Assembly: GCF_947568905.1 (NCBI RefSeq)
Contig: NC_079164.1
Location: forward strand, 103,974,001 to 104,038,000
Direction of reading: 5' to 3'
From: Ostrea edulis
Lineage: Eukaryota
Length of the DNA: 64,000 nt
The notes below the pieces were generated by a model, which saw only the letters and a list, made by a program, of their open reading frames with translations, was not told the DNA's origin and ran no database searches. The translations under genes were made by a program, and so were the position numbers. Shown piece after piece: positions 28,814 through 52,584 of this stretch (the first letter of the stretch is position 1; each line of letters begins with the position of its first letter).

Positions 28814-29033
28814 NNNNNNNNNNNNNNNNNNNNNNNNNNNNNNNNNNNNNNNNNNNNNNNNNNNNNNNNNNNNNNNNNNNNNNNNNNNNNNNNNNNNNNN
28901 NNNNNNNNNNNNNNNNNNNNNNNNNNNNNNNNNNNNNNNNNNNNNNNNNNNNNNNNNNNNNNNNNNNNNNNNNNNNNNNNNNNNNNNNNNNNNNNNNNNN
29001 NNNNNNNNNNNNNAAATATCAGGACAACGCTTT
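28814..29033. other. Assembly gap (220 N)
   Basis: Run of N. Confidence 1.
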
Positions 29034-31122: not shown

Positions 31123-31311
31123 TGGTACAGTTTGACAGAGCCAAGGTGTCTGCGGATGTTTGCGAGTGCTTCATTCAGTTTTATCAGGACCCAGAGACAA
31201 AACAATTTCTGTCTAACTGTATGAAAAAGCTGACTGGTTGTTTACTCAGCTGTACCACTCCATTGCTAAGTCCATTCTCGGATGGTTCATGACAAACACT
31301 TCCATCAATGG
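31123..31311 (+). CDS. METTL9: METTL9 exon 2, with two apparent 1-nt deletions
   Basis: WY-x-FDRAKVSADVCECFIQFYQDPETKQFLSNC-x-EKADWLFTQLYHSIAKSILGWFMTNTSING is colinear with METTL9 only if one base is restored near 31130 and one near 31221. The exon is 189 nt; the flanking phases (0 in, 2 out) require 191. Confidence 0.85.
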
Positions 31312-31630
31312 GTGAGTGCATGATTTATTCTGAATTCCATTATAGTTCTGTCTGCTTTAGTAATTTCAGTATAAACTAGCTAGCAACATATGATAATTTG
31401 CTTATTTGAATGTCAAGTTGTAAAACCATAAAAACGTTAAGTTATGGGATATTTTGTGATGATAATAAAAAATCACTTGAGTGAGCTACTGATTTTCATG
31501 ATTGATTAGAATAGAATTTTTTTAATATGTCGAAATATGATAATGAACACTTACATTCATTAAGTTTGTTGGAATCATGGTCCAAGAGGAAGGATGGGGA
31601 TTGAAGTTTTACTGGAGTAAATGTATTATA

Positions 31631-32210
31631 AACAAGAGGCTCATGGGCCACATCGTTCACCTGAGTCACCTTAGCCCATATCTAAAGATGTTCCCTATAT
31701 ATTTGCATGTAAAACTTTGATACCTATTGTGGCCCCAACCTACCGCCAGGGGCTATGATTTTAACAAACTTGAATTTGCACTATGTCAGAACGCTTTCAT
31801 GCAAATGTATATTTCTTTTACTAAATGGTTTTTGAGAAGAAGATTTTCTCTATATATTTGTATGTAAAACTTTGATCACCTGTTGAGGGGCCCATCCTAC
31901 CCCCGGGGGCCATGATTTTAACAAACTCGAATCTGCACTATGTCAGGAAGCTTTCATGTAAATGTAAACTTTCCTAGCACAGTGGTTCTTGAGAAGATTT
32001 TCCCTATATATTTGTATGTAAAACTTTGATCCCTGATTGTGGCCCCATCCTACCCTTGGAAGCCATGATTTTAACAAACTTGAATCTGCACTATGTCAGG
32101 AAACTTTCGTGTAAATTTCTACTTTCCTAGCCCATTGGTTCTTGAGAAGAAGAATTTCCCTATATATTTGTATGTAAAACTTTGATCCCTATTCTATTAT
32201 TTGACCTTTA
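31631..32210 (+). mobile_element. Helentron-like element with ~155-bp Cg170-like monomers (METTL9 intron 2)
   Basis: aaacaagaggctcatgggccacatcgttcacctgag start; ttttaacaaact recurs at about 31760, 31916 and 32069. Confidence 0.7.
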
Positions 32211-32480
32211 CATAAAAGGTCATGGTCAAATAATAGAATAGGGATAAAAGGTCAAGGTCAAAGGTCATCACAAATGACACGTGACACACAGCCTTATCAT
32301 GGTATACCCACATACCAAATATCAAAGGCCTATGTCAAAAGACAAAAAAGTTATGGCCCTGACAAACTTTGTATGAGAAGCGGAAGAAGAGCAAGCGGAG
32401 GAAGAAGAATTCACACTAAAACAATATGTCCCCCTTCTAAAAGGAACTTGATGTGTCAGCATGACAATGACATTCAAGTT

Positions 32481-32804
32481 CGAGGTCTTGAGGTAGAGCG
32501 TTTGCCCTGCATGCGGAAGGTCGGGTTCGAATCCTGGCTGCCACAGACCTAAGTTGTTAAAACAGGTAGTGACAGTTCCAACGCCAAACACTCTGCATCA
32601 GGTGTAAATGTCATGGGTCCTTGGAGATGACCTTAAAAGGGATGTCCCATGTTATATAGTAGATGTGGCTTGCTAAAGAACCCTCACTGCTCAGTGGCCG
32701 TAAGCGCCGAGCATAGGCCTAAATTTGAAGTCCTTCACCGGTACTGGTCTCCATATGAGTGAAAAATTCTCGAGAGGGACATTAAACAAGATACAATCAA
32801 TCAA
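32481..32804 (+). mobile_element. tRNA-derived SINE (bivalve Meta-type-like)
   Basis: ggtagagcg A-box part, gggttcgaatcc B box, conserved central body, caatcaatcaa tail. Confidence 0.7.
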
Positions 32805-33221
32805 GTTTGAAGTCCAAGAATGTGAAAATAACATTGGGTGGAAATGAAAGAAAAATTGTTTGTCATATTGGTGCTTTTGTTTTCTTGAATAGTTATGAAG
32901 AGAACAATTTCAATACTTTAATTCATTAATTGTTCATAAATTTCTGAGGAAAAGAAGGGAGCGTGTGTTACTTTTGAAATTTTAAAAATATGTCAATTGA
33001 CATGAAACTCTTATCAATATAAAGAAATATACCAAATATTCGACAAGCACAGAAAAAAATCCCAACTGTTATGAAAGGAATGGGATTACACTATAGGCTC
33101 TGACCATGGCGGGGGCATAAACATTCAGATAAAACTTACATACAGGTGTGGTTGTATGTCTTGTTGTTTGACTATCAAAACATGGGTCTACTGTGCCTTA
33201 GCAGTATTTGTTCTGTTGCAG

Positions 33222-33322
33222 ACTTCTCCAAAGAGGTTCAATGTTTGTTTTCTCGGAGGAACAGCTGAGACAGCTTCTGCAGATTGAGGAAGGATGGCAG
33301 GGACAAAACATATTAGATCTTG
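33222..33322 (+). CDS. METTL9: METTL9 exon 3
   Basis: LLQRGSMFVFSEEQLRQLLQIEEGWQGQNILDL; AG/GT boundaries, phase 2 to 1. Confidence 0.92.
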
Positions 33323-33690
33323 GTACATGTATAATTTCTCTTCCATCCTCCATTTATTGATGCAATAAAATTCAAACTTTAATTTTCAACACCAAAATGC
33401 TATTACATACAAATATCCAATTTTTTTTTCATTTATGACAATTTCAATAAGTGTGTTATTCCTCAAGATACAAACTGTTCTGGTTTCCATAATCTCTGAA
33501 AAAATTAATGACATGTAATTTGCATATCATATTTGTACCTTGCGTCTTTATGATGGATTTTTCCTGGTGGAGATATCCTCAAAGCTCAGTAAAATCCAAT
33601 ATAGAAAGAGATCGTCGATCTTCACTTTTTGGGATACCTTGGCGAGGCTAGTCTTGATTGGTAACAAACATGTTTGTCTATTATGGACAG

Positions 33691-33799
33691 GTGCTGGAGA
33701 TGGACGTGTGACAGAGAAGATGGCCAGGTACTACCGACAGGTGTATGCTACAGAAGTATCCTCCACAATGGTTTGGAGACTACGAGAGAAAAACTACAA
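33691..33799 (+). CDS. METTL9: METTL9 exon 4 (SAM-binding motif I)
   Basis: GAGDGRVTEKMARYYRQVYATEVSSTMVWRLREKNY; completes LDLGAGDG. Confidence 0.93.
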
Positions 33800-33972
33800 G
33801 TATATTGCTTAATATGATAAAAACTTCATTTATGATATAAAGCCAATAGTGACAGCAACACAGTATATGAAATTTTCACTCACTTTCTTGATTTATTTTG
33901 TTTTTGATAGTTAAAATTGTGTCATTGAATAGCTTCTTTTTTTTGAAAAGTTTATTCTAATTTACCTTTCAG

Positions 33973-34157
33973 AATACTGGAATTAGATGAGTGGGACAAT
34001 GGTAGCATTTCCTTTGATCTTATTAGTTGCCTAAACCTTCTAGACAGATGCAACAAGCCAATGACCATTCTTCATTCCATTAAGAAGGTGCTGACTCCAG
34101 GTGTTGGAAGAGCCATTGTAGCAGTGGTGTTGCCCTTCAAACCTTATGTGGAGCAAG
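33973..34157 (+). CDS. METTL9: METTL9 exon 5
   Basis: ILELDEW...FDLISCLNLLDRCNKPMTIL...AVVLPFKPYVEQ; AG/GT boundaries, phase 2 to 1. Confidence 0.94.
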
Positions 34158-34743
34158 GTGTGTTTTTAGATCGCCTAACACTGTGCTAGAATTATATCCA
34201 TTTTGATCAAGTTCTATGTCAAAACAAAAGGCCCATAGACAACATCATTCACTTGAGCAGTTGCATCTTCCTGTATAAAATCTAAACCCCCATTATGGCC
34301 TGCCTTTGCCATGGGAAATACATCTAAATAATTAACTTTTTTATATTTACACAAAACCTGGCTCCCAAAATCGTGTTTGTAAATAGTCTTTGTCTCTATC
34401 TAGAGTGAGGCAATTGTGTGCATATTTCATAGGACTGTAAAGAAATGCTTGTATCAGTCAAGAAGCCATGTGTGTAGATAAGAATATCCATTTCTAGAAA
34501 AGTAGGACAAAAACATTCAACATTTCAAAATTGGTTAATGATGAATCAATTTAGGGTGGATGCACAAAGAAAAAGAAACTGAAAATTTTTGTTATGAAAG
34601 TTTGTTTTTTTACTGAAACTATCAACTGTAATGCCATGTTGAATTGTTGATAGTTGGGCCATGAAACTAAACTTAACAGGGCTCGGGCCTTATTTTGAGA
34701 ATGAAAAGTGTAAATGTCTCAAATACATCTTTGCGTCAATTTT

Positions 34744-35957
34744 TTATCGCAATTCACCTTTGAATTAGAACGCTTTGGCCGATATAGTATTGCGTTGTGT
34801 GACAACACAATTGAATCTGTTTGTAATACAATTGCGAAATGCAACAGAAACTCTCATTGGTCCATATGTATAGTTCCGCCCAAATTCCCTTATACGGGAG
34901 TAGTCAGTATTTGAAAACATGACAGCCAGATGCTAGATGAAAAAAAACTTCAAAGGAAGAAAGAGAAAAAATTGTATTCTTGTGTTGTTGTCTCATAAAT
35001 TTAATATAAGAAAATTCCTACTGTAACATATTTTCCTACTATACTTGTGTCCAAACATACCTTCAAATATTTATTAAAGCCCCATACGACCCACTTTTGA
35101 TGATTTCGTTCGTAGACGTAGCCATGTTAGGTAGCCAGTCAATTCGAATCCCGGTTCATTTCCATATTGGCACATATTTAGCGTCTAGATGTGTACTAAT
35201 ACCCCACAAATATTTTAGCTAAATTGTTTAAATAATATACAACCCCAGTCCTATTAAATGATAAAATTCAAATAGCTAAACTCACGGCAGTGCGGCTTTC
35301 ATTAGTCATGGGCGGCCGAGCCGGCCGGTCTCCATCTAATGTCCTTATGTAGCATTTTCGTTCATCTAGAGCTTATTTTACCTTTACAAAAACTGGTACA
35401 AAAATGTTTTAATTTCTATTAATTATTCTTGTTGATAATAAATGAAGAGCGAATACATAACTTACAACCGATTTTATGAATAGATACCAATAGCAAGAGT
35501 TCGAATTGACCGGCTAACTAACATATTTACGTCAACAAACGAAATCATTTGAAGCTGCGAGTTTTCGGGTGGTGTGTGGCTTTAATGAATATTTGAAGGT
35601 ATGTTTGGACGCAAGTATATAGTAGGAAAATATGTTAAGATTTTTTTTATATTGAGTTTATGAGACAGCAACACAAGAATACACCGATTTCAGGCCTCAA
35701 CCGTCCGCAGCTTTTTGTGACCCGTAAATCAAAGGTTTTTATAAGAGGTGGATCTTTTCAGAGAACTATGTACAGTTCTCCAGCTACACTGAATCCGCTC
35801 GAGAAAGTGGGCGGGCTGTAATCGGCCAATGAAAACTCTTGCTGTATTACATCAAACATGTTTTTCAAATTGTTCAATCGTCTCATTCAATTGTGTCGTC
35901 ACACAACGCAATACTATATCGGGTAAAGCGTTCTAATTCAAAGGTGAATTGCAATAA
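34744..35957. mobile_element. 1.2-kb element with ~75-bp TIRs enclosing a foldback (METTL9 intron 5)
   Basis: ttatcgcaattcacctttgaattagaacgc...acacaattgaat is mirrored at 35886-35957. Confidence 0.7.
34974..35682. mobile_element. Internal foldback segment with long imperfect inverted arms
   Basis: Arm gtattcttgtgttg...ccttcaaatatttattaaagcc...atgatttcgttcgtagacgt...gtcaattcgaa and its reverse complement at about 35500-35682. Confidence 0.7.
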
Positions 35958-36112
35958 ATTTAGGTTTATTGATTTGCTTTACATATATCAAATACTTTAA
36001 TATTACTGGTTAAAGATCTATAAAATTATTCCCCCCCCCCCCCCCCCCCCCAATCATGTCCATGTCCCTTTATTGAAAGTTTTGGCTTTTGTGGTTTAAT
36101 GATTTGAAAGAT

Positions 36113-37840
36113 TTTTATGCCCCCCTTTGAAAAAGAGGGGGCATATTGTTTTGCAACAGTCGGTCGGTCAGTCCGTCGGTCGGTCTGTAGACCACATGTT
36201 GTCCGCTCAATATCTTGAGAACCATTCGCTTGATGATATTGATATTTCATATGTGGGTTGGTTATGAGTGGAAGATGACTCCTATTGTTTTTCAGGTCAA
36301 AAGGTCAAGGGTCAATCTACTCTGGACATAGGAATATAATGTCTGCTCAATATCTCGAGAACCCTTTGCTTGAAAGACATCAAACTTGGCACACTGGTAC
36401 ATCCTAACGAGTAGATGACACCTATTGATTTTGAGGTCATATGGTCAAAGGTCAAACTGGGCATAGGAATATACTGACCATTCAATGTCTAGAGAACCCT
36501 TTGCTTGACAGACATCAAACTTGGTACACCAGTACATCTTCAGAAGAAGATGACCCCTATTGATTTTGAGGTCACATGGTCAAAGGTCAAGGGTCAAACT
36601 GGACATAGGAATATACTGTCCGTTCAATATATTGAGAACCCTTTTCTTGACATCAAACTTGGTACACTGATACGTCTTCAGGAGAAGATGACCCCTATTG
36701 ATTTTGAGGTCACATGGTCAAAGGTCAAGGGTCACACGGGACATTGGAATATACTGTCCGTTCAATATCTTGAAAACCCTTTGCTTGACAGACATCAAAC
36801 TTGGTACACTAGTACGTCTTCAGGAGAAGATGATCCCTATTGATTTTGAGGTCACATGGTCAAAGATCAAGGGTCAAACTGGACATAGGAATATAATGTC
36901 TGCTCAATATCTTGAGAACCCTTTTCTTGACAGACATCACACTTAGTACACTGGTAGATCTGCAGGAGAAGATGACTCGTATTAATTTTGAGGTCACATG
37001 GTCAAAGGTCAAACTAGACATGGGAATATTCTGTCTGCTCAGTATCTTGAGAACCCTCTTCTTGACAGACATCAAACTTGGTACACTGATACGTCTTCAG
37101 GAGAAGATGACCCCTAATGATTTTGAGGTCACATGAGCAAAGGTCAAGGGTCAACCTGGGCATAGGAATATACTGTCCGTTCAATATCTTGAGAACCCTT
37201 TGCTTGACAGACATCAAACTTGGTACACTAGTACATCTTCAGGAGAAGATGATCCCTATTGATTTTGAGGTCACATGTTTAAAGGTCAAGGGTCAACCTG
37301 GACATTGGAATATACTGTCTGCTCAATATCTTCAGAACCCTTTGCTCGACAGACATCAAAGTTTAAATAGTACACTGGTGTATATTCAGGAGAAGATGAC
37401 TCCTATTGATTTTGAGGTCACATGATCAAAGGTCAACTGGACATAGTAATATACTGCCCACTCAATATCTTGATAACCCTTTTACTTGACAGACATCAAA
37501 CTTAGTACATTGGTACATCTTCAGGAGAGGATGACCCATATTGATTTTGAGGTAAAAAGTCAATAGTTGAACTGGACATAGTAATATATTGTCTCCTATA
37601 TTTTAAGAATTATTTGCTTGATTGACACGTACCAAACTTGGTACACTGGTACAGCATAAGGAGTAGATGACCCCTATTGAATTTTAGGTCACATGGTCAA
37701 TTCACTCTTAACATAGGAAGATATTGTCTGCTCAATATTTTGAATTGATGATAATACTATCAATTAAATGAGGTGTGTGTATAACCCTTTTCAATTTTGC
37801 ACCATGGGGGGCATATGTGTTTTACAAACATCTCTTGTTT
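36113..37840 (+). mobile_element. Helentron/DINE-like element with (GTCG/GTCC) microsatellite and ~135-140-bp tandem monomers
   Basis: 5' tttttatgccccc...gggggcata hairpin, gtcggtcggtcagtccgtc tract, about 10 monomers containing gacatcaaacttggtacact, 3' ggggggcatatgtg...ctcttgttt. Explains the repetitive ORFs at 36505-37425. Confidence 0.75.
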
Positions 37841-37988
37841 AAGAGTGTCCTACAACATTCTTACCATTTGTTAATTATTCCCCTTTGAAGGGATCATGAT
37901 AACTTGAATACCCTTTACACCAGGATGATTGGTGCCAAGTTTGGTTGAAATATACGGTCCATTAGTTCTGTAGAGGACAGTAAAGAGA

Positions 37989-38098
37989 GTATACTGCCTC
38001 GCTAGAGAGCTAGTTTTTCTAGTGATAAGTTAAAGCAACGGCGAGCGTGATTAGGCCTTGAATGGGTGACCGCTACACATTATAGTTCTTAAGTAGAC
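37989..38098 (+). pseudogene. 5S rRNA-derived fragment (5S pseudogene or SINE3 head)
   Basis: aagttaaagcaacggcgagcgtgattaggccttgaatgggtgaccgc (38027-38073) resembles the internal control region of invertebrate 5S (AAGTTAAGCAACGTCGAGCCCGGTTAGTACTTGGATGGGTGACCGC, recalled from memory); the 5' half is more decayed. Confidence 0.6.
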
Positions 38099-39139
38099 GA
38101 TGTGAAATGTGCAAATGACAAAGTTTGATCAGCTCTTGAGAGCTAAAATGATCACATGAATACATAAAGATTTTAAGATACCATAGTGTCATCATTATTC
38201 CTCGAATGTTGTCTTGTTGTACATGTATTTGTGGACGAGCAAGATTACAAAATCAAGTAATGAACAAAGTAGCAATGAAGGTGAAAGAACATCTGTCCAC
38301 AACACAGGCTCCAGATGTTTTAAATATATATAATAAAAAAAGCTGTCTTCCTGTAAATAAACTATTCACAGTTTGTTTACAGGAAGGCAACTTTTTTTAT
38401 TATATAATTATTTAAAACGTTGAGAGCCTGTGGTTCACAATTATATAAAATTAGTTCTGACTGATCCATGAAAGAAGGGTGACTTTATCGAGCCGAGAAC
38501 CCACAGAAGGACAAATATCAAAGTTATAATTGAAAATCTCCAGAAAAAGAAAAATTTGCATTCTAGTCAATCCAGTTTCCAAAAATTCTTTACGATGTGC
38601 TCATTTCAAAGGAGCATTGAAAAAATTCTATTGAAAATCACATATACGCGAAAAACGCACAAAATAACAGTAAATTTGACTTTTCCAAGCAGATTCTCAT
38701 GTGAAGTGGGCCAAGTCTCCATTGTGAACTGAGTAAATATATTAGTTCATGTTCAGGTGTAAAATATTTTGTAAATAAAAGTATGGAGACTTGACCGACT
38801 GTATGAAAAAACTTACTTCTTGTGTACAACTTTTGTCGTATTATCAAGAAAATTTCCATGTCCACGTCGGGTGACTTTAGATAGCTTGAATTCGAAAATT
38901 CTTCATGTGATGGATAGCCAAGGTGGTTTAACGACAGTCTCATTGAAGTTTTGCACAGGCCCAGATTGCACATCTGTGGTTCAAATACCAATTTTTCCTA
39001 CTTCTTTTTTTATGAATTATTAGACTTCCCATAATTATTTGTCTCAGGAATTTTATGCTAAGTTTTACTCATAGCATGCAGTCTTAATGATGATCACAAA
39101 TAATTGATTCCAACATGTAGCTAGTGAATAAATGTAAAG

Positions 39140-39690
39140 AAATATGGGGCCTCCTGTGAAGTATGGATGTTGTTTGTGTAAACGCCAACCTACATATAAA
39201 GGAAAGTTAAAGAGAACAATTTCAACAATGCTTAAGAAGTTACTTGAAGAGATCATGACAAAGGTCAAATATGCAACCAGTGCAGACTGTCTAAAAGGCA
39301 CAGTGTACTACAGTTCAGTACAAAAACAAATAAAGTGTCTGTTTCTGTCCCATTTGTATTTGCTGGGAAATCTAACAGCAAATGTGTGTACTGTAACTGT
39401 AAAAACGGTCTCAGAGTTGTACCAAAAGAGGCGAGAAGTGATATTTTTATATTCGGTATATTCGTACCAGTAGGTTGTAAATGCTGTTCAAAACATTTGT
39501 TGGGGAAAACTGGATCCAAATCAAAGCATTAATACTACACCATACAGAAAATGCTATTCCACATTTGATTTACACCATAAAACATCCGAGGTTTCTCATT
39601 CACATCAGTTAATATGTCAATGGAAATGTGAAGCACGTACTGTTGGATGTTGTGAGCATATATGCAGTATTATTAGGTACCTTAGGTACT
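39140..39690 (+). mobile_element. Internally deleted ISL2EU/Harbinger-like transposase remnant (METTL9 intron 5)
   Basis: Cys-rich N-terminal pieces (CCLCKR; GKSNSKCVYCNC...VVPKEARSDIFIFGIFVPVGCKCCSKHL) lie close to a SWIM-like C-terminus (CQWKCEARTVGCCEHICSII). No DDE core and no TIRs were found. Confidence 0.45.
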
Positions 39691-40049
39691 CCAGGGATCA
39701 GTGTATTGTGTGTATGTTATAAATTATATAATCCACTTAATGTCGGATATACATAATGCTGCCTGTGAAACAAATTCTGATTATGATTAAATATTCTTTG
39801 AAGTATGATCTATATATTTGTTTTTAATTCTAAATATTTTGGACAGTGTTTTAGTACGGTACTGTATCTATTGTAAATACGGGTACCATCAATGTGGATT
39901 TTATACTTCGCGACCAGTGCCCAATCACGAATAGGTTTATTGTTCGCCAAGTTCACCCATCCTCTTTAATGCTCTTGAAATTAAGGAAAACCATAGAATT
40001 AATTTTTCCTCATAAAGCTGGTAATTATTATAAATCTTTTCTGTTTCAG

Positions 40050-40258
40050 ATTCCAAAGATCACGTACCTGAAGAAAATATACTCATTCAGGGACAGAGTT
40101 TTGAGGAACAAATTCAATTCTTTATCACCAAGGTGTTTGAACCAGCTGGATTTCATGTAGAAAAATTTAGCAGACTGCCTTACCTATGTGAAGGTGACCT
40201 CCACCAATCATTTTATGTACTGGACGATGCAGTGTTTGTGATAAAACCAAAACTGTGA
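40050..40258 (+). CDS. METTL9: METTL9 exon 6 (terminal)
   Basis: DSKDHVPEENILIQGQSFEEQ...GFHVEKFSRLPYLCEGDLHQSFYVLDDAVFVIKPKL*; hallmark RLPYLCEGD...YVLDDAVFV. The corrected CDS is 963 nt (320 aa). Confidence 0.95.
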
Positions 40259-41086: not shown

Positions 41087-41166
41087 CTAAATCCAATCCA
41101 TTTCTTCATGAAAGCTTGCGATGAAGGACTTGTGTTTGTTTATTAGGGTTTCTGCATACCCTATTT
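41087..41166 (-). CDS. H2C2-domain gene, exon 5 (terminal)
   Basis: Acceptor ttttttcag; phase 1; KIGYAETLINKHKSFIASFHEEMDWI*. Confidence 0.65.
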
Positions 41167-41581
41167 CTGAAAAAAGAATTTTTTGATATAGACTGTTTTG
41201 TAACTTGAAACAAACCAATGCATATTAAAACTCAAATGCAGGTATTAGGCCAAAAACAATTAATTTGCATGTTTTTTTCAGAAATGGGTAGGTAGGTCAG
41301 ATTTGGTTTTTGTGTTTGTAACTCAAGTGGATATTTGAGGATACACGAAAAACCTGTGATACTGCCTACTTTTTGACGTCTTAAATTTTCTAGTGTTATC
41401 AAAATTTTGGAGGTAGACAAGGGCAGATAATTTAATTACGATAATTGGATCCTAATCCTCAGCTTTAAACAGTTTAAAGGATAGATTAATAGGGTATGTC
41501 AGGAAACCAGAACCATGCAATTATTTTTCTTTATACCTTATTTAAGTGATAAATCATTATTAGGGGTGGGGGTGGACTTAC

Positions 41582-41698
41582 TCTTTCTGAGCCTGTCCAT
41601 TGCATGGTAATCTGACAAAATGGATTTCATAACATCCATCCGCATATCCTGAATGGCGATCAGCAACCTTCCGTAATAGTTTTTCTCTGTCAGCATCT
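41582..41698 (-). CDS. H2C2-domain gene, exon 4
   Basis: Acceptor ttttccag, donor gtaagt, 117 nt phase 1-1; EMLTEKNYYGRLLIAIQDMRMDVMKSILSDYHAMDRLRK. Confidence 0.72.
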
Positions 41699-41809
41699 CT
41701 GGAAAATTTAAATTTAAACTATTATGAAATAGTTTACAATTCCTTTCATGCAACTGCAAAAAGCATTTTACATATTCTGCTTTCTGTGTCATAAATTTCA
41801 TATACATAA

Positions 41810-42805
41810 ACAAGTGGCCCATGGGCATCGCTCACCTGAGTCACCTTGTTCTTGCTTGTGATTTTTAACAGATTTTTTTTAACTCACATGAGCTGACAGC
41901 TCAAATGAGCTATTCTGATCACTTTGTCTGGTGTCTTCCATCCCTCCATCTGTCTGTATATTTTTAACCTCTTCTCCAGAACCACAGGGGTAATTTTTTT
42001 TCAGTCAAACTTGCTATAAAGCATGCTTGGATAAAGAGGATTCAAGTTTTTTCAAATACCATGCCCTTTTTGAAGGGAACATAATCAGGAATTAGTAAAA
42101 ATTTTGTGACATCTATTATAAATCTTCTCAAGAACCACTGGGCCAAATTCAATAAAAATTGGCACAAATCATCCTTGAGTGAAGGGGATTTAAGTTAGTT
42201 CAAATGAAGGGACATGCTTCCTCCACAGGGGAGATAATCAAGAAAAGGCGAAAATAAGGTGGAGTCATTTAAAAATCTCAAGAACCACTAGGCCAGAAAA
42301 GTTGAAATTATTGACTGCTTCCCGACATACCGGTAGTGTAGATTCAATTTCTTGTTCAAATCAAGGCCCCCGGGGGTAGGTTGGGGCCACAATAGGGGAT
42401 CAAAGTTTTTCATGGTGATTTATAGAATAACTCTTTAAAATATTCTCAAGAACAACAAGACCATGATTAATCATATTAATATGCAAGCATCCCCAGGTAG
42501 TACAGATTTAATTATTTTCAAATCATGATCACTGGGGGAGGATGGGGTCACAAATGGGGATCAAAGTTTTATATGAGTATAAATAGGCAAAATCTTTGAA
42601 AATTTCATACCGTGATTTTTTTTATCTTGTAATATTGTATCATGGTTATATCATATGACACTATGGGGCTACGTTGAGGCCACAATATGGCGTCAAGATT
42701 TTTCATGGGAATAAAAGTTGCAATTTTTTTTAAAAAATCACAATAGCTGAACAACATCAGGGCTAAGGTGACTTTGTGAGTGATTTGGCTCATGGGCCTC
42801 GTTTC
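41810..42805 (-). mobile_element. Helentron-like element with Cg170-like monomers, reverse orientation (a further + fragment lies at about 43090-43450)
   Basis: gagctgacagctcaaatgagct hairpin at the left; tttggctcatgggcctcgttt (reverse complement of the 5' motif) at the right. Confidence 0.6.
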
Positions 42806-43742
42806 AAGATTTAAAAGATTGTGGTGTGAAATGCAACATCTTTCCATGAGGAATCTAAATACAAAATACAATGTTTGAAAGCCCTACCTTAAATAGTTCA
42901 GGAGATATTTTTCATAAAAGACTTAAGTAGCCAGGTCAAACTCCCAAGATCAAACATTTGGTACCAATAAATGTCTTGTCACAAGGAATATACATATTTG
43001 AAACATGAAAGCCCTATCATTCCCCATTTAAAAGTTATGAGTGAGGTTAAAGTTTCGGATATACAGTGTAGCCCTACTACTTTTGGAATCCAGTGTATTC
43101 CTATATAAAACTTTGATCTCCAATTGTGGCCCCACCCTAGCCCTGGAACCATGATTTAAACAAACTTTAATCTACAGTATGTCAAAAGCTTTAATATATA
43201 GATTTCAACTTTACTGGCCCAAAGGTTCTTGAAGGTTTTTAAATGACCCCACCTTATTTTTTACTTTTATTATCTCCCCTTAGGAGACACAACTCTTCAT
43301 TTGAACAAACTTGAATTCACTTCATCCAAGGGTGACTTATACCAAGTTTGATTGAAATGGAGTGAGTGGTTCTGGAGAAGCAGATGAAAAAGTTAAAAGT
43401 GAACGACAGAATTGCCAAACAAATTCCGATCAGAAAAGCTTACTTGAGCTTTTGGTTTAAGTGAGCTGAGAACAACTACTGTAGAATCATTTAAATTCGT
43501 GGGGGCCAATTTTCGTGGATTGCTGAATGTTTACGGGTTCATGGGGACATAATTTTGTGGATTTATATATTTGTAAGAAAGATAACTCAGGAATGTTTGC
43601 TTTGTCTTTATTCGTTGAGGATGTAAATTTGTGGGTGAGGGGTACCTACGAATTCCACGAAAATTGAGCCACCACGAATTCTAATGATTCCACAGTACAT
43701 GTATACTGGAGTTACTTAATCATCTATTTACCACTACACTAC

Positions 43743-45482
43743 CTTCTGAGAAAGACCAGATAGCAGGACAGGGGATTGGACCAGGATCAGGCAACATGGG
43801 CTGTGCAGTTGTTTTATCCGAGTTTTGTATTGTTGCTCCTACGTGAATCTTCAAGTCTCGAGTGAACCTATCACCTCTTCCTGTGAAGTTTTCATTCATG
43901 ATTTGATTCACATCAAAAGGACATGATTCAGTCTGTTGAATGCTTTGTTGTCCTTCTGCATCAGATGACTTATTTACATACAGGATATCTTTATCACATT
44001 TCCCTGGACTTCCTGATATCTCTTTCTTGGATGTACCTCTGAAATCCACACAAGATGAGCCTCCATTTCTTGATATTGATTCTTCACCCAACAATGATGT
44101 GGCAGTGCTAAGTTGATCAGCTGGGGTAGATCTTTCATCAACAATGTAAGAAGTGTGAACATTGCTGGATTTATCGTGGATAGTGACATTACATTGTCCT
44201 TTGAAGTTAATATTCATGCTGGGGATCCTTAATCTATTGGTAAGTATTTTCTTCATCTTCTCTGGATTAACAACAATAATCTTCTTGAAGGTTTCATCAA
44301 GTTCATTAGAGGACTTGTCCAATTTTTCTTCATTTTCATTACCATTCTTTCTGTTGCTTTTCCCAACATTTGTATTTACTGGTTTTGGAGAAGCAAATTT
44401 CATTTGCTTTTTACCAGAATTCCCCTTATTGTCAAGTTTTTCTGGCTTTACTTTCAGTTTTTTCTTCACTCCTGATGAAGAGTCTTTCTTGACTTCACCC
44501 TTGCGTTTTTTAGCTGCCGTGGATAAAACACTGCTTGAATTTGTACTGTTGTCTGCTGCACTTTGAAGGTCTTTGTTTAGTTTTTCGTTCTTTGGTTTGA
44601 TTGGTGGTAAAACATTTGTGTGACTGGTGGAAATCATTATCTTTGGCTGTGACTGAATCTGGTCAGTGATTTTTGATTGATTGTTGATTGTGGACAACTT
44701 TGGGTGTGCAGTACTTTCCTGTAGATGAATAGCTTCTGTCTTCTCTGAAGCACTTTTAGTCATTTTTGCAGCTGTATCATCCTTAGCCATCAGAAGCGGA
44801 GCTGTGGTAAGAGTAGGCATTGATGTGGTGGAAGGTGAACACAATGTTGAAGTATTCAGGGACACCAGTGGAGTGGCCACAAAAGAGATGGAGAAACCAG
44901 TCGGTGAGGAAGAATTGGGCACTTTAACATAATACCCTAAGGCCGGGGCTCTTGGAGTCATCAGCGATCCCAGCTTTGAATTTATCCCCAACACCTTGGA
45001 TACAGTAGCAGAGCTAGCTTTTGAAATTGTTTGAGTGGAAGCTGGAATCTGTTTCACTGTGTTCCCAGAACTTGTGTATAAACTCTCAGTTGATTTTAAG
45101 TGTGTGTTGCTGAAAAATGGAAAGACGGAGACACTAACTGCATGGTGTAATAATGGCAATGAGAGCGACACATTTTGACCTGTACTGGTGATTACGCTTG
45201 GCTTTGTAGTCATCAACTGAGATAACAAAGTACTGTGGATGATCGGATGACTTTCTTTAACTTTAGTCTTATTTTTATTGGCTTCAGTCTGGTTCCAGTC
45301 AACTGGTTGCCCTCTTTGATTGGTACTGTCTGCTGCTGATGAAGTTGTCTGTGCACATTTCTCAGTTCCTAATCCACTGCTAGTGCTTGATAAAACTTTC
45401 TTCTTTTGACTTTCCAAATTTTGCTCCATGTTATTTGGTATGGATGCTGTGACAGTAGTTTGCTTTCCAGTCTTATTTGTAT
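43743..45482 (-). CDS. H2C2-domain gene, exon 3 (580 codons, Ser/Thr/Lys-rich low complexity)
   Basis: 1740-nt stop-free exon; acceptor tgtttaag at 45483, donor gtagtg at 43742, phase 1-1; basic cluster KKRKGEVKKDSSSGVKKKLKVK. Confidence 0.8.
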
Positions 45483-45508
45483 CTTAAACACAAATAGAAA
45501 TAGTTTAA

Positions 45509-45829
45509 GGATGTTCTCTACATCGTCATAATGGCTGACTTCCTTTTAAAACATGGATGAAAATATGAATATTAGTAATATTTGTCTATTCATTAAAAAC
45601 GTCAATGCCTAGCTGAGTAGCTCAGTAGGTTAGCACGCCGACTGCTGAACTGTAGATTGCGGGTTCGAGTCCAGCAGGGGTTTTAAATTTTTTTCAAATT
45701 GCTTTTGACTAAAACTGCATTTTTTGACTAAATTTTCAGTGAATTTTAAAAAATTTCAATTTCAAAATATTGTTGCACATATCCTCCACTTTTCATCCAT
45801 ATCAAATTTCTCTGATGTAGCATACCTCC
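45509..45829 (+). mobile_element. TTAA-flanked MITE (Kolobok-like) with an internal tRNA-like Pol III A/B-box segment
   Basis: TTAA at 45505-45508 and 45830-45833; imperfect TIRs ggatgttctctacatc / gatgtagcatacctcc; internal tagctcagtagg ... gggttcgagtcc. Confidence 0.8.
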
Positions 45830-45949
45830 TTAAATGACATTCTTATTTCATGTATACATTTAATTTTCATATTTTTAACATGTATTATAATGAATTCATT
45901 CTGCAATATGGATTTTGAGCTATTCTTTTTCAATTTTAATTTATTACAT

Positions 45950-46084
45950 TGTAGTATAGGAGGAGGAGAAAATCTTTGGCTGGATCGGGAATCGAACCCG
46001 GGACCCCTGCATTACTAGTCAGGTGCTCTAACCACTGAGCTATCCAGGCTGATATCCACGGTCCATATAGCCCTAATTACTACA
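45950..46084 (-). mobile_element. tRNA(Thr)-containing solo LTR (Helenus-type TRIM-like)
   Basis: TGTAGTA...TACTACA termini; exact 4-bp TSD ACAT (45946-45949, 46085-46088); minus strand TAGCTCAGTGGTTAGAGCACCTGACTAGTAATGCAGG...GGTTCGATTCCC. Confidence 0.8.
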
Positions 46085-46446
46085 ACATAATTTTAAAAAC
46101 TATGGATCTGGGTCATGACACAACCTCTGACTTGAGTCAAAGAGGAACCCTCAGGTCAATTTTAAGGGGATATAATTCTGATGTTTTTTATGTCACTGCG
46201 CAACTCGAACTAATGTACTTAGGTTATGGTTGTCGAGACAAACATCGATTATGACTTTAACTTAAGTCATATTTTTAAAAATAACGGTAATCATCCAACT
46301 TGTTACAAAGTTATGGTTTGGATGTGACTCACACTGACAAGTATATACCCCTCCCACTAAACTTCATTTGCTCATATACATTGTGAACATTTGAACAATA
46401 TTTATTATAGTTGATAGCAATACATTTATTCATTTCTACATCTTAC

Positions 46447-46576
46447 CAGCTAAGATTCCTTCCTTAAGATTACCAGATTGAAACCCCTCACAAATGGGAC
46501 AGTTTCTTACAACTCCTCTTACAAACTCTTCACTCATTCCAAAGTTTCTTCGTCCAAAAGTATATGTTTTCTGAAT
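46447..46576 (-). CDS. H2C2-domain gene, exon 2
   Basis: Acceptor ttgcag, donor gtaaga; IQKTYTFGRRNFGMSEEFVRGVVRNCPICEGFQSGNLKEGILA supplies the CxxC that completes the H2C2 motif; phase 0 to 1. Confidence 0.82.
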
Positions 46577-46635
46577 CTGCAATTTAAGACATTAAAGTGA
46601 GTTAATACATAATATGCAAATACATATTTTATGGG

Positions 46636-46697
<62 letters not shown>

Positions 46698-47490
46698 TAT
46701 GGAATCTGAATCATTAAAATTTGTGTGGACCAGCCACCAATTTTTGTAAGATTGCCAAGATTTTACAGTTTCGAGGGATGCTGCATGATCATGGATATGT
46801 TTTCAGTACCTATACATTAAAATATCATGTAAATTTTGTTGATTTGAAATTCGTGGGACGAGTCTCTCAAAAATTGAGTCACTTCAAAATCTTACAATTC
46901 CACAGTATTTCTATCTGATACATAGCATTCCAGTCATAAAAATGATCTTTAAATATAATTTACATTTTTTGCCTTTGATATATTTAGCAATACTTTTTGA
47001 AGTGATAGTTATTTCCTCATGAATGTGTCTGTTGTAAACAATACACATAATATGCCATATGAATCTTGATAAATATAGTAAATAGTACATCTATTTTAAC
47101 GACTGGGAATTCTGACGGAAAAGAAAGTAGAATGTAATTTTATACACTTGAGGGTATGAACTGCAACACTTCATGCTGGCAAGCAAGCCCCGCTGTAAAA
47201 TGGCTGAAATATTGCCAAAACAGCATAAAACCATATGCAAATCTTTACCCAAGCTTGCTTTGAGGCAGTATAGCTGATATTAGCCCATTGGTTTGAGAAG
47301 TCAAATATCTTAAGTTTATGGATGGATAGACGGACACCAGACAAAAAGTGATCAGAAAAGTTCACTCATGACATGTGAGCTAAAAACTACAAAAGCCACG
47401 GAGAATTCTACTTGGGTTTTTCCCCATAGATGGTGGGTCAAGAGCCATAACTTTAGTAAAGTGTGAATTCGGTCAATATTTCCTATGAAC

Positions 47491-47624
47491 TGTAGTATAG
47501 GAGAGGAGAAAATCAATGGCTGGACCAGGAATCTAACCAGAGACCCCTGCATTACTAGTCAGGTGCTCTAACCACTGAGCTATCCAGGCCGATAACCATG
47601 GTCTGTAGAGCCCTTACTACTACA
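47491..47624 (-). mobile_element. tRNA-containing solo LTR, same subfamily as 45950-46084
   Basis: TGTAGTA...TACTACA termini, degraded B box; the flanks (gaac/taat) give no TSD. Confidence 0.7.
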
Positions 47625-47897
47625 TAATGTTAGTGAAGGAATCTCTGCTAAATACAACACTATCCATGGAAAGGAAAATTTGTTACATTTAGTAATAAAG
47701 TAATATTATTTTTGAACAAAACTAGGCCTAGTCTATTTGAATTCCAAGTCTTTGAGGGCTTAGAGGTCCGCTTTGAGGGCTAAACTGGCGACTTTCAGGG
47801 CTAGTATTATTACTTTACAGGCTAAATGGCTACTTCCATTTTTATTTTTATTTTTTTTGGTAAAAAAAATCAAATATAAACATACTTTGCTGCCCAC

Positions 47898-48221
47898 CTT
47901 TTTCATTGTGGCAAATGCATTCAAATGACCACCATATTCATCACAGTGATTTGCAATAATAATTTCTACAAATTTTTCTTTCGGAACTACCACTTTTCCT
48001 GTAGGTAAATGGATTAGAACATTTTCTGATTCACGATAGAGTAACCTCTGAATCCATGATTTAAATTTTCGAAAAGGTCTTGGGCGAGCGGTTTCTTCCT
48101 GGCTTGCAAATTTGGCTTCCAATAAATCTCTTTTGCTTGGGAAATGCCCATGTGCCAAAAACCTAACGATTATATCGTACTGCTTTTGATTTAAGCAACC
48201 ACCGCGTCCCACTTCTTCCAT
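47898..48221 (-). CDS. H2C2-domain gene, exon 1 (integrase zinc-binding domain, N-half)
   Basis: MEEVGRGG...GKVVVPKEKFVEIIIANHCDEYGGHLNAFATMKK; donor gtgggc at 47897, phase 0. An upstream in-frame ATG at 48314 is also possible. Confidence 0.8.
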
Positions 48222-48823
48222 TTTGTTTCCCAAACACCAGAGTGACGAAGATTGACATTCATATTCTTTCGCGCTCACAACTACTGTCCATTCTCTCACC
48301 AGAGGGCGTTTCACGGCTACCCATGTCCTAAATCATAATGTATCGGTTATGCAAGAAAATTCGTTTGAAGTGTTTCCGGTTATGAGTTAAAAGAGAACAA
48401 CATGCCGCTTCGACAGGTAGGTAGATCTGAGTTTTTCTTGTTTATGATAATTTAACCACTGTTGACGAAAATCGGGGAATGTAGTCAGCTGTAGAAATGA
48501 TTAAAGTACACGAAATAACCACAATTACCCATATCTAAAGCGGCAAGACGACACGAGATGATTTTCCGAGAGCCGAAGGAGGTTGAATTTTGAAAATTTC
48601 TCATAGCTCTCGATTGTCAGGGTCAATATCAGCTCAATCAGCTAACCAGTCGAAATAAGTTGACCACTCTAGGGACGATTTGTGCAAGTTAAAATTAAAA
48701 TATTCTACTTTTTTGATGTTGGTGTTTGTATTTTGCCAAAATTTCTATCCAAACGGGTCAGGTAATGCGTTAGGGGATAAGTTATGATTTAATGGATTGG
48801 TTAAGATTTAGAGGAAAATTTGG

Positions 48824-49084
48824 TTATCGCAATTCACCTTTGAATTAGAAAGCTTTACCCGATATAGTATTGCGTTGTGTGACGACACAATTGAATGAGA
48901 CGATTGAACAATTTGAATGACATGTTTGATGTAATACAGCAAGAGTTTTCATTGGCCGCCCACTTTCTCGAGCGGATTCAGTGTAGCTGGAGAACTGTAC
49001 ATAGCTCTCTGAAAAGATCCACCTCTTATAAAAACCTTTGAATTACGGGTCACAAAAAGCTGCGGACGGTTGAGGCCTGAAATC
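48824..49084 (-). mobile_element. Fragment of the 34744-35957 element (its right-hand ~270 bp)
   Basis: Reverse complement of 35686-35957 with few differences. Confidence 0.8.
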
Positions 49085-50959: not shown

Positions 50960-52584
50960 TCAAGAAAGCATAAGCGTTACCTAAGTATTTGACAATTAAA
51001 CGTCATGCATAAGTACTCGACATTTACATAATCCGTTAATTTTTTACATAGTCATAAATAAGTTGCTTATACACACCTTAGAATAATACACTCTATCTTC
51101 TTCAATTCTCTGCACCTACTATACATACAGTTGACATACTATCTGGGTCTAGCCTTGATTGCCACGTCTTTGGTTCCAGAGATAAGCAGCATCTTTATTT
51201 AGTTTTTGTGAATATGTTCCTGAATAAATATACATATACGAGTACAATGCATGTACATTGAAGAAAAATATCTACAGCTTATAAAATTTTTTGCATGGAA
51301 AAGAATAGAGGTGAATTCGCAAATCGAAAACAGTATCAATCTTTTTCTCCCTAACACGACTAATATTTTTCATATACCTTCGTTACAAATAAAAAAAATT
51401 GATTTCAATAACTTCTAAGTTATTGCAGATCCAGAATCTACATACTAATCTAAATTACGTCACGTAATACAAACTCATTCAGGTGCGTAATACTACTGTA
51501 TCTATCAGCGGGGTGTGTATTAACCAAATTTTCCTCTAAATCTTAACCAATCCATTAAATCATAACTTATCCCCTAAAGCATTACCTGACCCGTTTGGAT
51601 AGAAATTTTGTGTTTGAATGTTGAATGGATTTACTGATAGGTCAGATCAAAACAAAGTCGGACCATAACAAACTCGGACTACAAAAAGTCGGACCATAAC
51701 AAACTAGGACCATAACAAACTCGGACTATACTTATAATTATGAATGTAAATTGAAATTAACAAATTAACTCATTTAATTTTTCTTTTCTTTTACATTTGG
51801 GCGTTATTATGAACTTGAAAATGACCGATTTACCTGTAGATGTGACATTTACAGGATCCAGCGAGGTGAAGGGGGGTGGGGGTGAAATTTCAGTTTTTCT
51901 GTTGGAGGACTTGTAAGTTTACTCTACTTGGAATTTATTTTGCCAAAGTTAAGCAGAAAAAAGCAACGGTTCCAATATAGAATTCTGAACACAATTTTAG
52001 CTATTCTAAATCGAAATTATGTACATTCTGCCAGAAACAATTTAACATTTGTTTTTGCGGATGTGCTAGTGTTCAGCATTTCTTCAGAGAATTTAAAGGT
52101 TATTCAAATATCAATAGCAATTTTTTTTAATGAAATTCGGAAACATTTACATATTGCATATAAAAATTATGAAAAAGATATATATACCTTTAGTAGCTTG
52201 TTATAAACATTTTGTACAAGTTTCTTTGCAGAATGTATTTATTGTATATATATATATAAAATATCAGAAAAAAGGTTTTCTATTAGAATCTATATACTTG
52301 CACCCCCACAGTGTGAGACCCCCCCCCCCCCGGAAAAGTAACCTGGATTCGCCCAAACTATTATTTACTAGATTACTATATGCGTAATTGATGTATTAGA
52401 AATAGCCAACATATGTTTTTAAAATAAATATTTTATTTCCCATGGTATAAAGAACAGTGTGATATTATACAAGACATAAAAAGAGATCAGGTTTGTCAAC
52501 CAAGCACATCACAGTATTATACACAAAGTCCAGAGAGTAACACTATGAACTTCGATGAAACACACACGGACACATCAGGGATTT

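What the first reader, a model, noticed from the sequence alone, without database searches (positions are those of the whole stretch)
41087..48221. Spliced, intact gene with an orphan integrase H2C2 zinc finger, a huge disordered linker and a novel C-terminal domain
Seen: five exons with canonical sites and consistent phases (324+130+1740+117+80 = 2391 nt, 796 aa). Splicing exon 1 to exon 2 assembles H-x6-H-x34-C-x2-C preceded by a VVP.E..II..H motif. No DDE core follows; instead there are 580 stop-free S/T/K-rich codons with a basic NLS-like cluster and an LLSQLM helix, then a compact ~80-aa helical C-terminus (PCPAIWSFSEEMLTEKNYYGRLLIAIQDMR...MDWI). Established: H2C2 is the N-terminal Zn domain of retroviral/Gypsy integrases and Ginger transposases, and some host genes (GIN1, KRBA2/SCAND3-like) derive from such integrases but keep the core. 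Inference: a domesticated integrase-derived nuclear protein retaining only the oligomerisation/Zn module, possibly a chromatin factor or a dominant-negative regulator of integrases. This is the best candidate here for an undescribed host system.
Basis: partly seen in the sequence, partly recalled or inferred. Interest (0 to 1): 0.75.

Follow-up and report, generated by a model that had tools for sequence, protein, structure and literature searches.

The report
Integrase zinc domain plus DOC1-domain gene
An intact five-exon oyster gene joins the zinc-binding N-terminal part of a retroelement integrase to a CDK2AP/DOC1-like dimerisation domain through a long disordered linker. It belongs to an old, conserved but uncharacterised invertebrate host-gene family and is not a transposon.

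Summary
Five minus-strand exons (48221-41087) with GT..AG borders and consistent phases encode 796 aa. NCBI's Ostrea edulis model LOC130046669 uses the same first three exons, and Saccostrea orthologues carry all five.

The N-terminal ~135 aa is an integrase-type N-terminal region. Its H, H and first C are almost invariant across about 100 relatives. Pfam Integrase_H2C2 falls just below threshold. The best Foldseek matches are Ty3 and foamy-virus integrase N-termini. No member has a catalytic core.

The "novel" C-terminus is not novel. It is a CDK2AP/DOC1-type helical domain: the family profile matches CDK2AP2 at E 8.5e-6, and the model superposes on CDK2AP1 at 1.0 Å.

The gene is not an orphan. 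The same two-domain architecture occurs in bivalves, an annelid, a brachiopod, a bryozoan, arachnids and insects. In molluscs, annelid and brachiopod it lies tail-to-tail with METTL9. dN/dS is 0.04-0.10 in the two domains.

Best reading: a dimeric nuclear adaptor with a likely link to Mi-2/CHD (NuRD). That link is inferred, not shown. Every database member is unnamed, and I found no paper describing the family. I rate it a new variant of the domesticated-integrase kind.

The parts
47898..48221 (-). Exon 1 (324 nt, 108 codons). Holds the start codon, the N-terminal extension of the integrase-like domain and the two His ligands (47948-47946, 47927-47925).
   Evidence: 82% aa identity to Saccostrea; dN/dS 0.10.
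46447..46576 (-). Exon 2 (130 nt). Holds the rest of the integrase-like domain with C-x2-C (46501-46499, 46492-46490).
   Evidence: This exon alone gives Pfam Integrase_Zn E 0.038; dN/dS 0.21.
43743..45482 (-). Exon 3 (1740 nt). Long S/T/K-rich linker, predicted disordered, with islands conserved among oysters: 45211-45252 (LLSQLM motif), 44878-44940, 44590-44610, 44242-44286, 44134-44208. It also holds a basic NLS-like cluster at 44437-44511.
   Evidence: dN/dS 0.38. pLDDT below 50 over most of the orthologue's linker.
41582..41698 (-). Exon 4 (117 nt). First and most of the second helix of the CDK2AP/DOC1-like domain.
   Evidence: P0027, the window's own ORF, scores 43 bits on the C-domain HMM; dN/dS 0.035.
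41087..41166 (-). Exon 5 (80 nt including the stop at 41089-41087). End of the CDK2AP/DOC1-like domain and a species-specific tail.
   Evidence: The first 12 codons are conserved with Saccostrea; the tail differs.
43732..43742 (-). 11-nt extension used by annotated isoform X2 (alternative donor GTG|GTAAAT). It puts exon 4 out of frame, with a stop after two codons, so that isoform lacks the C-terminal domain.
31131..40252 (+). Neighbour: exons of a METTL9/DREV-like methyltransferase gene, tail-to-tail with this gene. This is a conserved microsyntenic partner, not part of the gene.

Best explanation
This is an old cellular gene, not a mobile element. Its product has three parts.

(1) An N-terminal domain of about 135 aa. 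It has the fold and the H-H-C-C zinc ligands of the N-terminal region of Ty3/Gypsy and foamy/gamma-retroviral integrases, meaning the zinc-binding helical bundle and at least part of the stretch before it. There is no catalytic core.

(2) A linker of about 580 aa, predicted disordered, with an NLS-like basic cluster and a few short conserved islands.

(3) A C-terminal helical domain of about 65 aa of the CDK2AP/DOC1 type. In CDK2AP1 this domain forms a four-helix-bundle dimer, and cross-links tie the protein to the C-terminus of CHD3/4 in NuRD.

Most likely working (inferred). The protein dimerises through the C-domain and enters the nucleus. It uses the C-domain to dock on, or compete for, the Mi-2/CHD remodeller, or to pair with DOC1. 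The two tethered zinc domains would bind DNA, chromatin or a partner. That would make it a targeting or regulatory adaptor of a chromatin remodeller.

Shown: the gene structure, both domain assignments, conservation, synteny and purifying selection. Inferred: dimerisation, nuclear location, the CHD/NuRD link and what the zinc domain binds.
For: Gene model.

N-domain:
- Pfam Integrase_H2C2 E 6.6e-5 to 1.8e-4 in the three oyster proteins. It is the most recurrent Pfam match in the family, 13 of 44 members.
- H, H and the first C are present in 100/101, 100/101 and 87/87 members. 82 of 84 full domains keep the H..H..C..C pattern.
- AF2 pLDDT is above 90 for residues 4-140.
- The top Foldseek matches are only integrases. 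They are PFV 3l2q (prob 0.97, 120 columns), Ty3 7q5b (E 0.014-0.043, prob 0.96-0.97) and the MLV N-terminal domain. Against viral models, foamy-virus Pol fragments reach E 1.7e-3, prob 1.00.

C-domain:
- Pfam CDK2AP is above its cut-off in the annelid member (E 7e-8). It falls below the cut-off in two more members.
- The family profile hits only CDK2AP2 (E 8.5e-6) and CDK2AP1 (E 9.8e-4) at E below 1 in the PDB.
- The Foldseek match to CDK2AP1/2 has prob 0.99, TM 0.66-0.72 and rmsd 1.0-1.8 Å.

Host-gene status:
- It is a single locus, with no LTR or TIR around it.
- It sits tail-to-tail with METTL9 in two oysters, a scallop, Solemya, a unionid, the annelid Owenia and the brachiopod Lingula.
- The intron between the His pair and the Cys pair is shared by oysters, scallop, mussel and Lingula.
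- dN/dS is 0.10, 0.21, 0.38 and 0.035 for exons 1-4.
- No rve core was seen in 72 members scanned.

CDK2AP1 as a four-helix-bundle dimer tied to the CHD3/4 C-terminus: PMC8246863.
Against: - No integrase match passes a formal threshold. Pfam scores 23.4 bits against a cut-off of 25.5, and the Foldseek E-values are 1.7e-3 at best.
- The family profile finds no integrase by sequence in the PDB.
- Most members have C-x4-C rather than the integrase C-x2-C.
- The oyster C-domain alone is not significant against CDK2AP2 (E 1.5). Significance comes from the family profile and the modelled fold.
- Nothing here shows zinc binding, dimerisation, nuclear location or any contact with CHD/NuRD.
- The CDK2AP fold is a small helical hairpin, so the partner could differ.
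- The annotated isoform X2 lacks the C-domain.
- I saw no transcript evidence for the E3-E4-E5 junctions.
Confidence: 0.6

Rival explanations
1. It is a fragment or decayed copy of a Gypsy/Ginger-type element (an integrase N-terminus followed by junk) that a gene predictor stitched into a model.
For: The only Pfam match of the oyster proteins is an integrase domain. The introns hold SINE- and MITE-like repeats.
Against: - It is a single locus, with no flanking LTR or TIR.
- The same five exons and intron positions occur in Saccostrea, and a shared intron occurs in scallop, mussel and Lingula.
- The METTL9 neighbourhood is conserved across three phyla.
- dN/dS is 0.04-0.38.
- The big profile search returned 79 hits. 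None of the 72 scanned by Pfam has an rve core, and no transposon integrase was among the 30 looked up by name.
Confidence: 0.02
2. The N-domain is an ancient cellular H2C2 domain that shares a fold with integrase N-termini but does not descend from a mobile element. Descent could run the other way, or the likeness could be convergent. The gene would then not be a domestication.
For: - All integrase matches are sub-threshold.
- The family is at least as old as the protostome ancestor.
- C-x4-C spacing dominates.
- No transposon integrase reached E below 1e-3 among 1.84 billion representatives.
Against: In three structure searches the top-ranked matches (the first four, twelve and eight) were only integrase N-termini, apart from CDK2AP1/2 for the C-domain, with probability mostly 0.9-1.0. 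Integrase_H2C2 is by far the most recurrent Pfam match. The longest alignments also run into the region before the finger (120 columns to PFV integrase).
Confidence: 0.2
3. One reading: the protein acts against retroelement integrases as a dominant-negative partner of their N-terminal domains. With the new C-domain result, it could also tether them or their DNA to a repressive remodeller.
For: It keeps the integrase part that is credited with aiding multimerisation (works cited in PMC12863088). It has a NuRD-subunit-like domain.
Against: The N-domain is too diverged from present-day element integrases to be found by sequence, and that argues against specific co-assembly with them. The slow, uniform purifying selection does not look like an arms race. 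There is no direct evidence.
Confidence: 0.08
4. It is the invertebrate member of an already named family, so the family is not new. My untested lead from memory is vertebrate NOL4/NOL4L. UniProt also names four insect members 'DUF3736 / Genetic suppressor element-like domain-containing'.
For: Source names for Glossina, Bemisia and Polypedilum members. My recollection of a similar N-terminal pattern in NOL4 is memory only.
Against: - None of the 30 hits looked up by name is from a vertebrate or carries a characterised name.
- This Pfam copy gives no DUF3736 match to those insect proteins.
- No paper links NOL4 with integrase or CDK2AP domains.
- No tool could fetch NOL4 or GSE1 for a direct test.
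Confidence: 0.15

Closest known systems
Domesticated integrase genes (GIN1, KRBA2, NYNRIN, SCAND3/ZBED9; Imagin of malacostracans, PMC12863088)
   Same: A single-copy, multi-exon host gene under purifying selection, in conserved synteny, with an integrase-type H2C2 N-terminus.
   Different: Those genes keep the integrase core fold, and Imagin lacks only the DDE triad. Here the core is absent in every member and a CDK2AP-like domain sits at the C-terminus. This family is also older and wider (lophotrochozoans plus arthropods). The statements about GIN1, KRBA2, NYNRIN and SCAND3 rest on my own knowledge.
CDK2AP1/CDK2AP2 (DOC1), subunits of Mi-2/NuRD
   Same: The C-terminal ~60 aa has the same fold and detectable sequence kinship. 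As in CDK2AP1, a disordered region precedes it.
   Different: CDK2AP1 is a ~14 kDa protein with no zinc domain. This protein is 796 aa with an integrase-like N-domain. NuRD association was not tested here.
N-terminal region of Ty3/Gypsy, foamy-virus and gammaretroviral integrases (N-terminal extension plus HHCC domain; PDB 7q5b, 3l2q, 3nnq)
   Same: These are the best structural matches of the N-domain, at 18-23% identity over 74-123 aligned columns. The same four ligands are present.
   Different: No catalytic or C-terminal integrase domains follow. Most family members have C-x4-C. Sequence matches stay below curated thresholds.
Yeast Spt10 integrase-like H2C2 finger (from my own knowledge; not tested here)
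   Same: It is a cellular protein that uses an integrase-type H2C2 finger without a core, there as a sequence-specific DNA-binding domain.
   Different: The partner domain is different (an acetyltransferase-like one) and the lineage is different. No relationship was tested.

Membership tests
Integrase zinc-binding N-terminal domain (Pfam PF17921 Integrase_H2C2 / HHCC) | Four zinc ligands in the order H, H, C, C with integrase-like spacing | tested here: met
   The window has H-x6-H-x34-C-x2-C. H, H and the first C are present in 100/101, 100/101 and 87/87 relatives. Most relatives have C-x4-C, which is a departure.
Integrase zinc-binding N-terminal domain (Pfam PF17921 Integrase_H2C2 / HHCC) | Score at or above Pfam's gathering cut-off (25.5 bits) | tested here: not met
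   22.0-23.4 bits in the three oyster proteins. 13 of 44 relatives match at E up to 1, and none reaches the cut-off.
Integrase zinc-binding N-terminal domain (Pfam PF17921 Integrase_H2C2 / HHCC) | Helical-bundle fold of integrase N-termini | tested here: inconclusive
   The top Foldseek matches are integrases only, with prob mostly 0.90-1.00, but E is 1.7e-3 at best. These are models, not solved structures.
Retroelement integrase / domesticated integrase genes (GIN1-like, Imagin-like) | An RNase-H-fold catalytic core (rve) after the zinc domain | tested here: not met
   There is no rve match in the exons, in the oyster proteins or in 72 relatives. AF2 shows no folded domain between residues 144 and 714.
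Mobile element copy (LTR retrotransposon or Ginger-type transposon) | Terminal repeats, multiple copies, element-type ORFs | tested here: not met
   No LTR or TIR pair encloses the gene, and there is one copy in the window. It sits in a conserved syntenic position in seven other genomes. Genome-wide copy number in O. edulis was not counted directly.
CDK2AP/DOC1 family (Pfam PF09806) | C-terminal helical domain recognisable by sequence | tested here: met
   The family profile matches CDK2AP2 at E 8.5e-6 and CDK2AP1 at E 9.8e-4, the only PDB hits below E 1. Pfam's cut-off is passed by the annelid member at 33.4 bits. The oyster protein alone is not significant (E 1.5).
CDK2AP/DOC1 family (Pfam PF09806) | Four-helix-bundle dimer fold | tested here: inconclusive
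   The monomer hairpin superposes on 2kw6 and 2m1l (TM 0.66-0.72, rmsd 1.0-1.8 Å, prob 0.99). Dimerisation could not be modelled with these tools.
CDK2AP/DOC1 family (Pfam PF09806) | A small protein that is a subunit of Mi-2/NuRD through the CHD C-terminus | not testable with these tools
   This protein is 796 aa rather than about 115. No interaction data exist for any member, and the reference for CDK2AP1 is PMC8246863.
NOL4/NOL4L (lead from memory) | Sequence kinship of both end domains | not tested
   No tool fetches a protein by name. No vertebrate appeared among the 30 hits whose names were looked up. The literature searches were empty.
GSE1-like (DUF3736, name given by UniProt to four insect members) | Match to the DUF3736 model | tested here: inconclusive
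   This Pfam copy reports no such match for P0042, P0104, P0107 or P0066 at E up to 10. I could not establish whether the model is still in the library.

The most novel reading that the evidence does not exclude
This is a protostome-wide gene family more than 500 million years old. It was born when the DNA-binding and oligomerising N-terminal region of a retroelement integrase was joined to a DOC1/CDK2AP domain. The product would be a so far unrecognised targeting subunit of the Mi-2/NuRD remodeller, possibly directing it to retroelement DNA or other specific sites. The family would be missing, or diverged beyond recognition, in vertebrates.
Probability: 0.15. Interest if true: 0.85.

Novelty: new variant of a known kind. 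Interest (0 to 1): 0.6.

Why it matters
Host genes derived from integrases are known. In the described cases I know of, or found here, they keep the catalytic-core fold, and most come from vertebrates. The one partial exception I came across is amphipod Imagin, which has lost the core, though its zinc motif is also degenerate. This case keeps only the N-terminal integrase region and pairs it with a domain otherwise known from a NuRD subunit. It has been held in one genomic neighbourhood (next to METTL9) across molluscs, an annelid and a brachiopod, and it also occurs in insects and arachnids. It therefore gives a concrete, testable candidate for how an integrase module was reused in chromatin regulation in invertebrates. 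It also gives a domain assignment to about a hundred database proteins that are now labelled uncharacterised or carry misleading names such as "inner centromere protein A-like" and "RabX-like".

Tried and rejected
- Exon-by-exon Pfam scan. Only a weak Integrase_Zn match to exon 2, because the domain is split by an intron.
- Word search with the N-terminal 150 residues. Only the three oyster proteins came back.
- Word search with a 22-member family alignment. Low-complexity candidates swamped it and it returned only mussel proteins. That search was wasted.
- PDB sequence search with one orthologue. Nothing significant, though it gave the first hint of CDK2AP2.
- DUF3736/GSE1 names of insect members. 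I could not reproduce them with this Pfam copy, and no paper uses the term.
- NOL4/NOL4L lead. Nothing came from the tools or the literature.
- Search for any paper joining CDK2AP with an integrase zinc domain. None was relevant.
- Transposon reading. Rejected on repeats, copy number, synteny, shared introns and dN/dS.
- Weak single-member Pfam matches (FYRC, TFIIA, NRIP1_repr_4 and others). I judged these to be noise.
Full report
**Where and what.** The window is from the flat oyster Ostrea edulis. Exon 3 of the finding is 100% identical to NCBI's "uncharacterized protein LOC130046669 isoform X2" (P0001, 737 aa). The gene lies on the minus strand.

**The gene model.** Reading the sequence gives these exons:
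- E1 48221-47898
- E2 46576-46447
- E3 45482-43743
- E4 41698-41582
- E5 41166-41087

All introns are GT..AG and the phases are 0, 1, 1, 1. P0001 contains the E1/E2 and E2/E3 junction peptides. It differs only at the 3' end. An alternative donor 11 nt downstream of the end of E3 puts E4 out of frame, with a stop after two codons, so that isoform lacks the C-terminal domain.

E4 and E5 are present in frame in the Saccostrea echinata and S. cucullata orthologues (P0003 792 aa, P0004 790 aa). Stops occur at 0.061 per codon on this strand, so the 579-codon open frame of E3 has a chance probability of about 1e-16.

**What I left out.** I did not build or search the joined five-exon sequence. The exons were searched one by one by reference, and database proteins from the same locus and its orthologues served for the whole protein. 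I saw no RNA-seq data. The N run at 28814-29013 was left untouched.

**Not a transposon.**
- No LTR or TIR pair encloses the gene. The repeats found are intronic SINE- and MITE-like pieces and one separate inverted repeat upstream.
- The window holds one copy.
- In S. echinata the gene sits between a WD40 gene and a DREV/METTL9 gene. The window has the same order. METTL9-like exons lie at 31131-40252 on the plus strand, tail-to-tail with this gene, and the first exon of the WD40 gene is near 62777-62842.
- The same tail-to-tail pairing with METTL9 holds in five further genomes. They are the scallop Argopecten, the protobranch Solemya (also with the WD40 gene upstream) and the unionid Potamilus. 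The annelid Owenia and the brachiopod Lingula show it too.
- The pairing is absent in Anopheles. No neighbouring gene was listed within 10 kb in Mytilus.
- Per-exon dN/dS between Ostrea and Saccostrea is 0.10 (E1), 0.21 (E2), 0.38 (E3) and 0.035 (E4), with dS 0.8-1.8.
- The intron that separates the His pair from the Cys pair is shared by oysters, scallop, mussel and Lingula.

**A family, not an orphan.** Word searches found only oysters. The claim therefore rested on the absence of relatives, so I ran the full profile search with the three oyster proteins. It gave 79 hits at E up to 1e-3.

Names were available for these:
- Bivalves: Argopecten, Mytilus, Solemya, Potamilus, Dreissena, Mya, Mactra
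- Other lophotrochozoans: Owenia (annelid), Lingula (brachiopod), Watersipora (bryozoan)
- Cnidarian: Hydra (weak match, N-domain only)
- Arachnids and a centipede
- Insects: flies, mosquito, sandfly, whitefly, psyllid, thrips, a moth

All are "uncharacterized", apart from evidently automatic names. Local HMMs of the two end domains show that nearly every hit has the N-domain and most full-length ones also have the C-domain. Lingula's model is split in two, and the second piece holds the C-domain.

**N-terminal domain.**
- Pfam Integrase_H2C2 matches residues 79-138 of the three oyster proteins at E 6.6e-5 to 1.8e-4. That is 22-23.4 bits against a cut-off of 25.5.
- It is the most recurrent Pfam match across the family, 13 of 44 members, and none reaches the cut-off.
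- The two His and the first Cys are present in 100/101, 100/101 and 87/87 members. 82 of 84 complete domains keep H..H..C..C. The Cys pair is C-x4-C in 66 members and C-x2-C in 15, oysters included.
- AF2 models residues 4-140 of P0003 with pLDDT above 90. A compact 217-aa member reaches a mean of 86.8.
- Foldseek's top-ranked matches for the N-domain are integrases only, in all three searches. They are foamy-virus integrase 3l2q (prob 0.97, 120 columns) and Ty3 integrase 7q5b (E 0.014-0.043). The MLV N-terminal domain and foamy-virus Pol models (best E 1.7e-3, prob 1.00) also appear.
- So the domain is an integrase N-terminal region. The longest of those alignments reach beyond the zinc bundle into the stretch before it.
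- Homology is likely but not formally proven, because every score is below threshold.
- No catalytic core exists in the exons, the oyster proteins or 72 relatives.

**C-terminal domain.**
- A first hint was a weak match to CDK2AP2.
- The annelid member passes Pfam CDK2AP at E 7e-8. A bryozoan and another member come close.
- The family profile hits only CDK2AP2 (E 8.5e-6) and CDK2AP1 (E 9.8e-4) below E 1 in the PDB.
- The model of residues 720-790 has pLDDT above 90. It superposes on 2kw6 and 2m1l with rmsd 1.0-1.8 Å and TM 0.66-0.72.
- The window's own exon 4 (P0027) scores 43 bits on the C-domain HMM.
- According to PMC8246863, the C-terminal half of CDK2AP1 is a four-helix bundle formed by a dimer. 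Cross-links tie the protein to the C-termini of CHD3/4 in NuRD.

**Linker.** It is 35% S+T+K and mostly below pLDDT 50. It contains a basic cluster at 44437-44511 and several islands conserved among oysters.

**How it most likely works (inferred).** The protein would be a dimeric nuclear adaptor. The C-domain would pair and dock on, or compete for, Mi-2/CHD or DOC1. The two tethered zinc domains would bind DNA, chromatin or a partner. The rival readings are weighed in their own section. They are a transposon fragment, non-integrase descent of the finger, an anti-integrase role, and membership of a family that is already named.

**Novelty.** I found no paper that describes this architecture. 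The nearest described cases keep the integrase core. I rate it a new variant of a known kind.

Noticed in passing
window 14358-17898: A 27-bp minisatellite of about 128 copies (77% matches). It explains the strong GC and AT skew of this stretch.
   Followed up: partly
window 45977-46049 and 47517-47589 (minus strand): Two tRNA-like heads of a SINE-type repeat sit in introns 2 and 1 of the gene. They lie within a 122-nt direct repeat at 88% identity (45963-46084 and 47503-47624).
   Followed up: partly
window 48737-48826 and 51521-51610: A 90-nt inverted repeat, 99% complementary, with arms 2.7 kb apart, lies just upstream of the gene. There is no ORF of 90 aa or more between the arms. It may be a non-autonomous TIR or foldback element.
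   Followed up: partly
window 41699-43742 (intron 3): The intron is dense with MITE-like direct and inverted repeats (73-99 nt, 64-88% alike).
   Followed up: no
window 43732-43742 and 41690-41698: Annotated isoform X2 uses a donor 11 nt further on. Exon 4 is then read as two codons and a stop, giving a product without the CDK2AP-like domain. The early stop could make this transcript a target for nonsense-mediated decay.
   Followed up: partly
window 28814-29013: A run of 200 N lies inside the METTL9-like gene region. It was left as it stands.
   Followed up: no
L007 12952-14757 (Lingula anatina): The Lingula gene model appears split. The 339-aa model holds the N-domain, and a separate 182-aa model downstream on the same strand holds the C-domain (hit at 14191-14571).
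   Followed up: partly
L008 9968-11794 (Anopheles marshallii): The mosquito member is a single intronless ORF and is not next to METTL9, unlike the lophotrochozoan genes.
   Followed up: no
L001 19984-22752 (Saccostrea echinata); window 13098-13394 and 51958-52103: A long ORF on the METTL9 side of the Saccostrea locus has weak matches at two unrelated places in the window. It is probably a dispersed mobile-element ORF.
   Followed up: no
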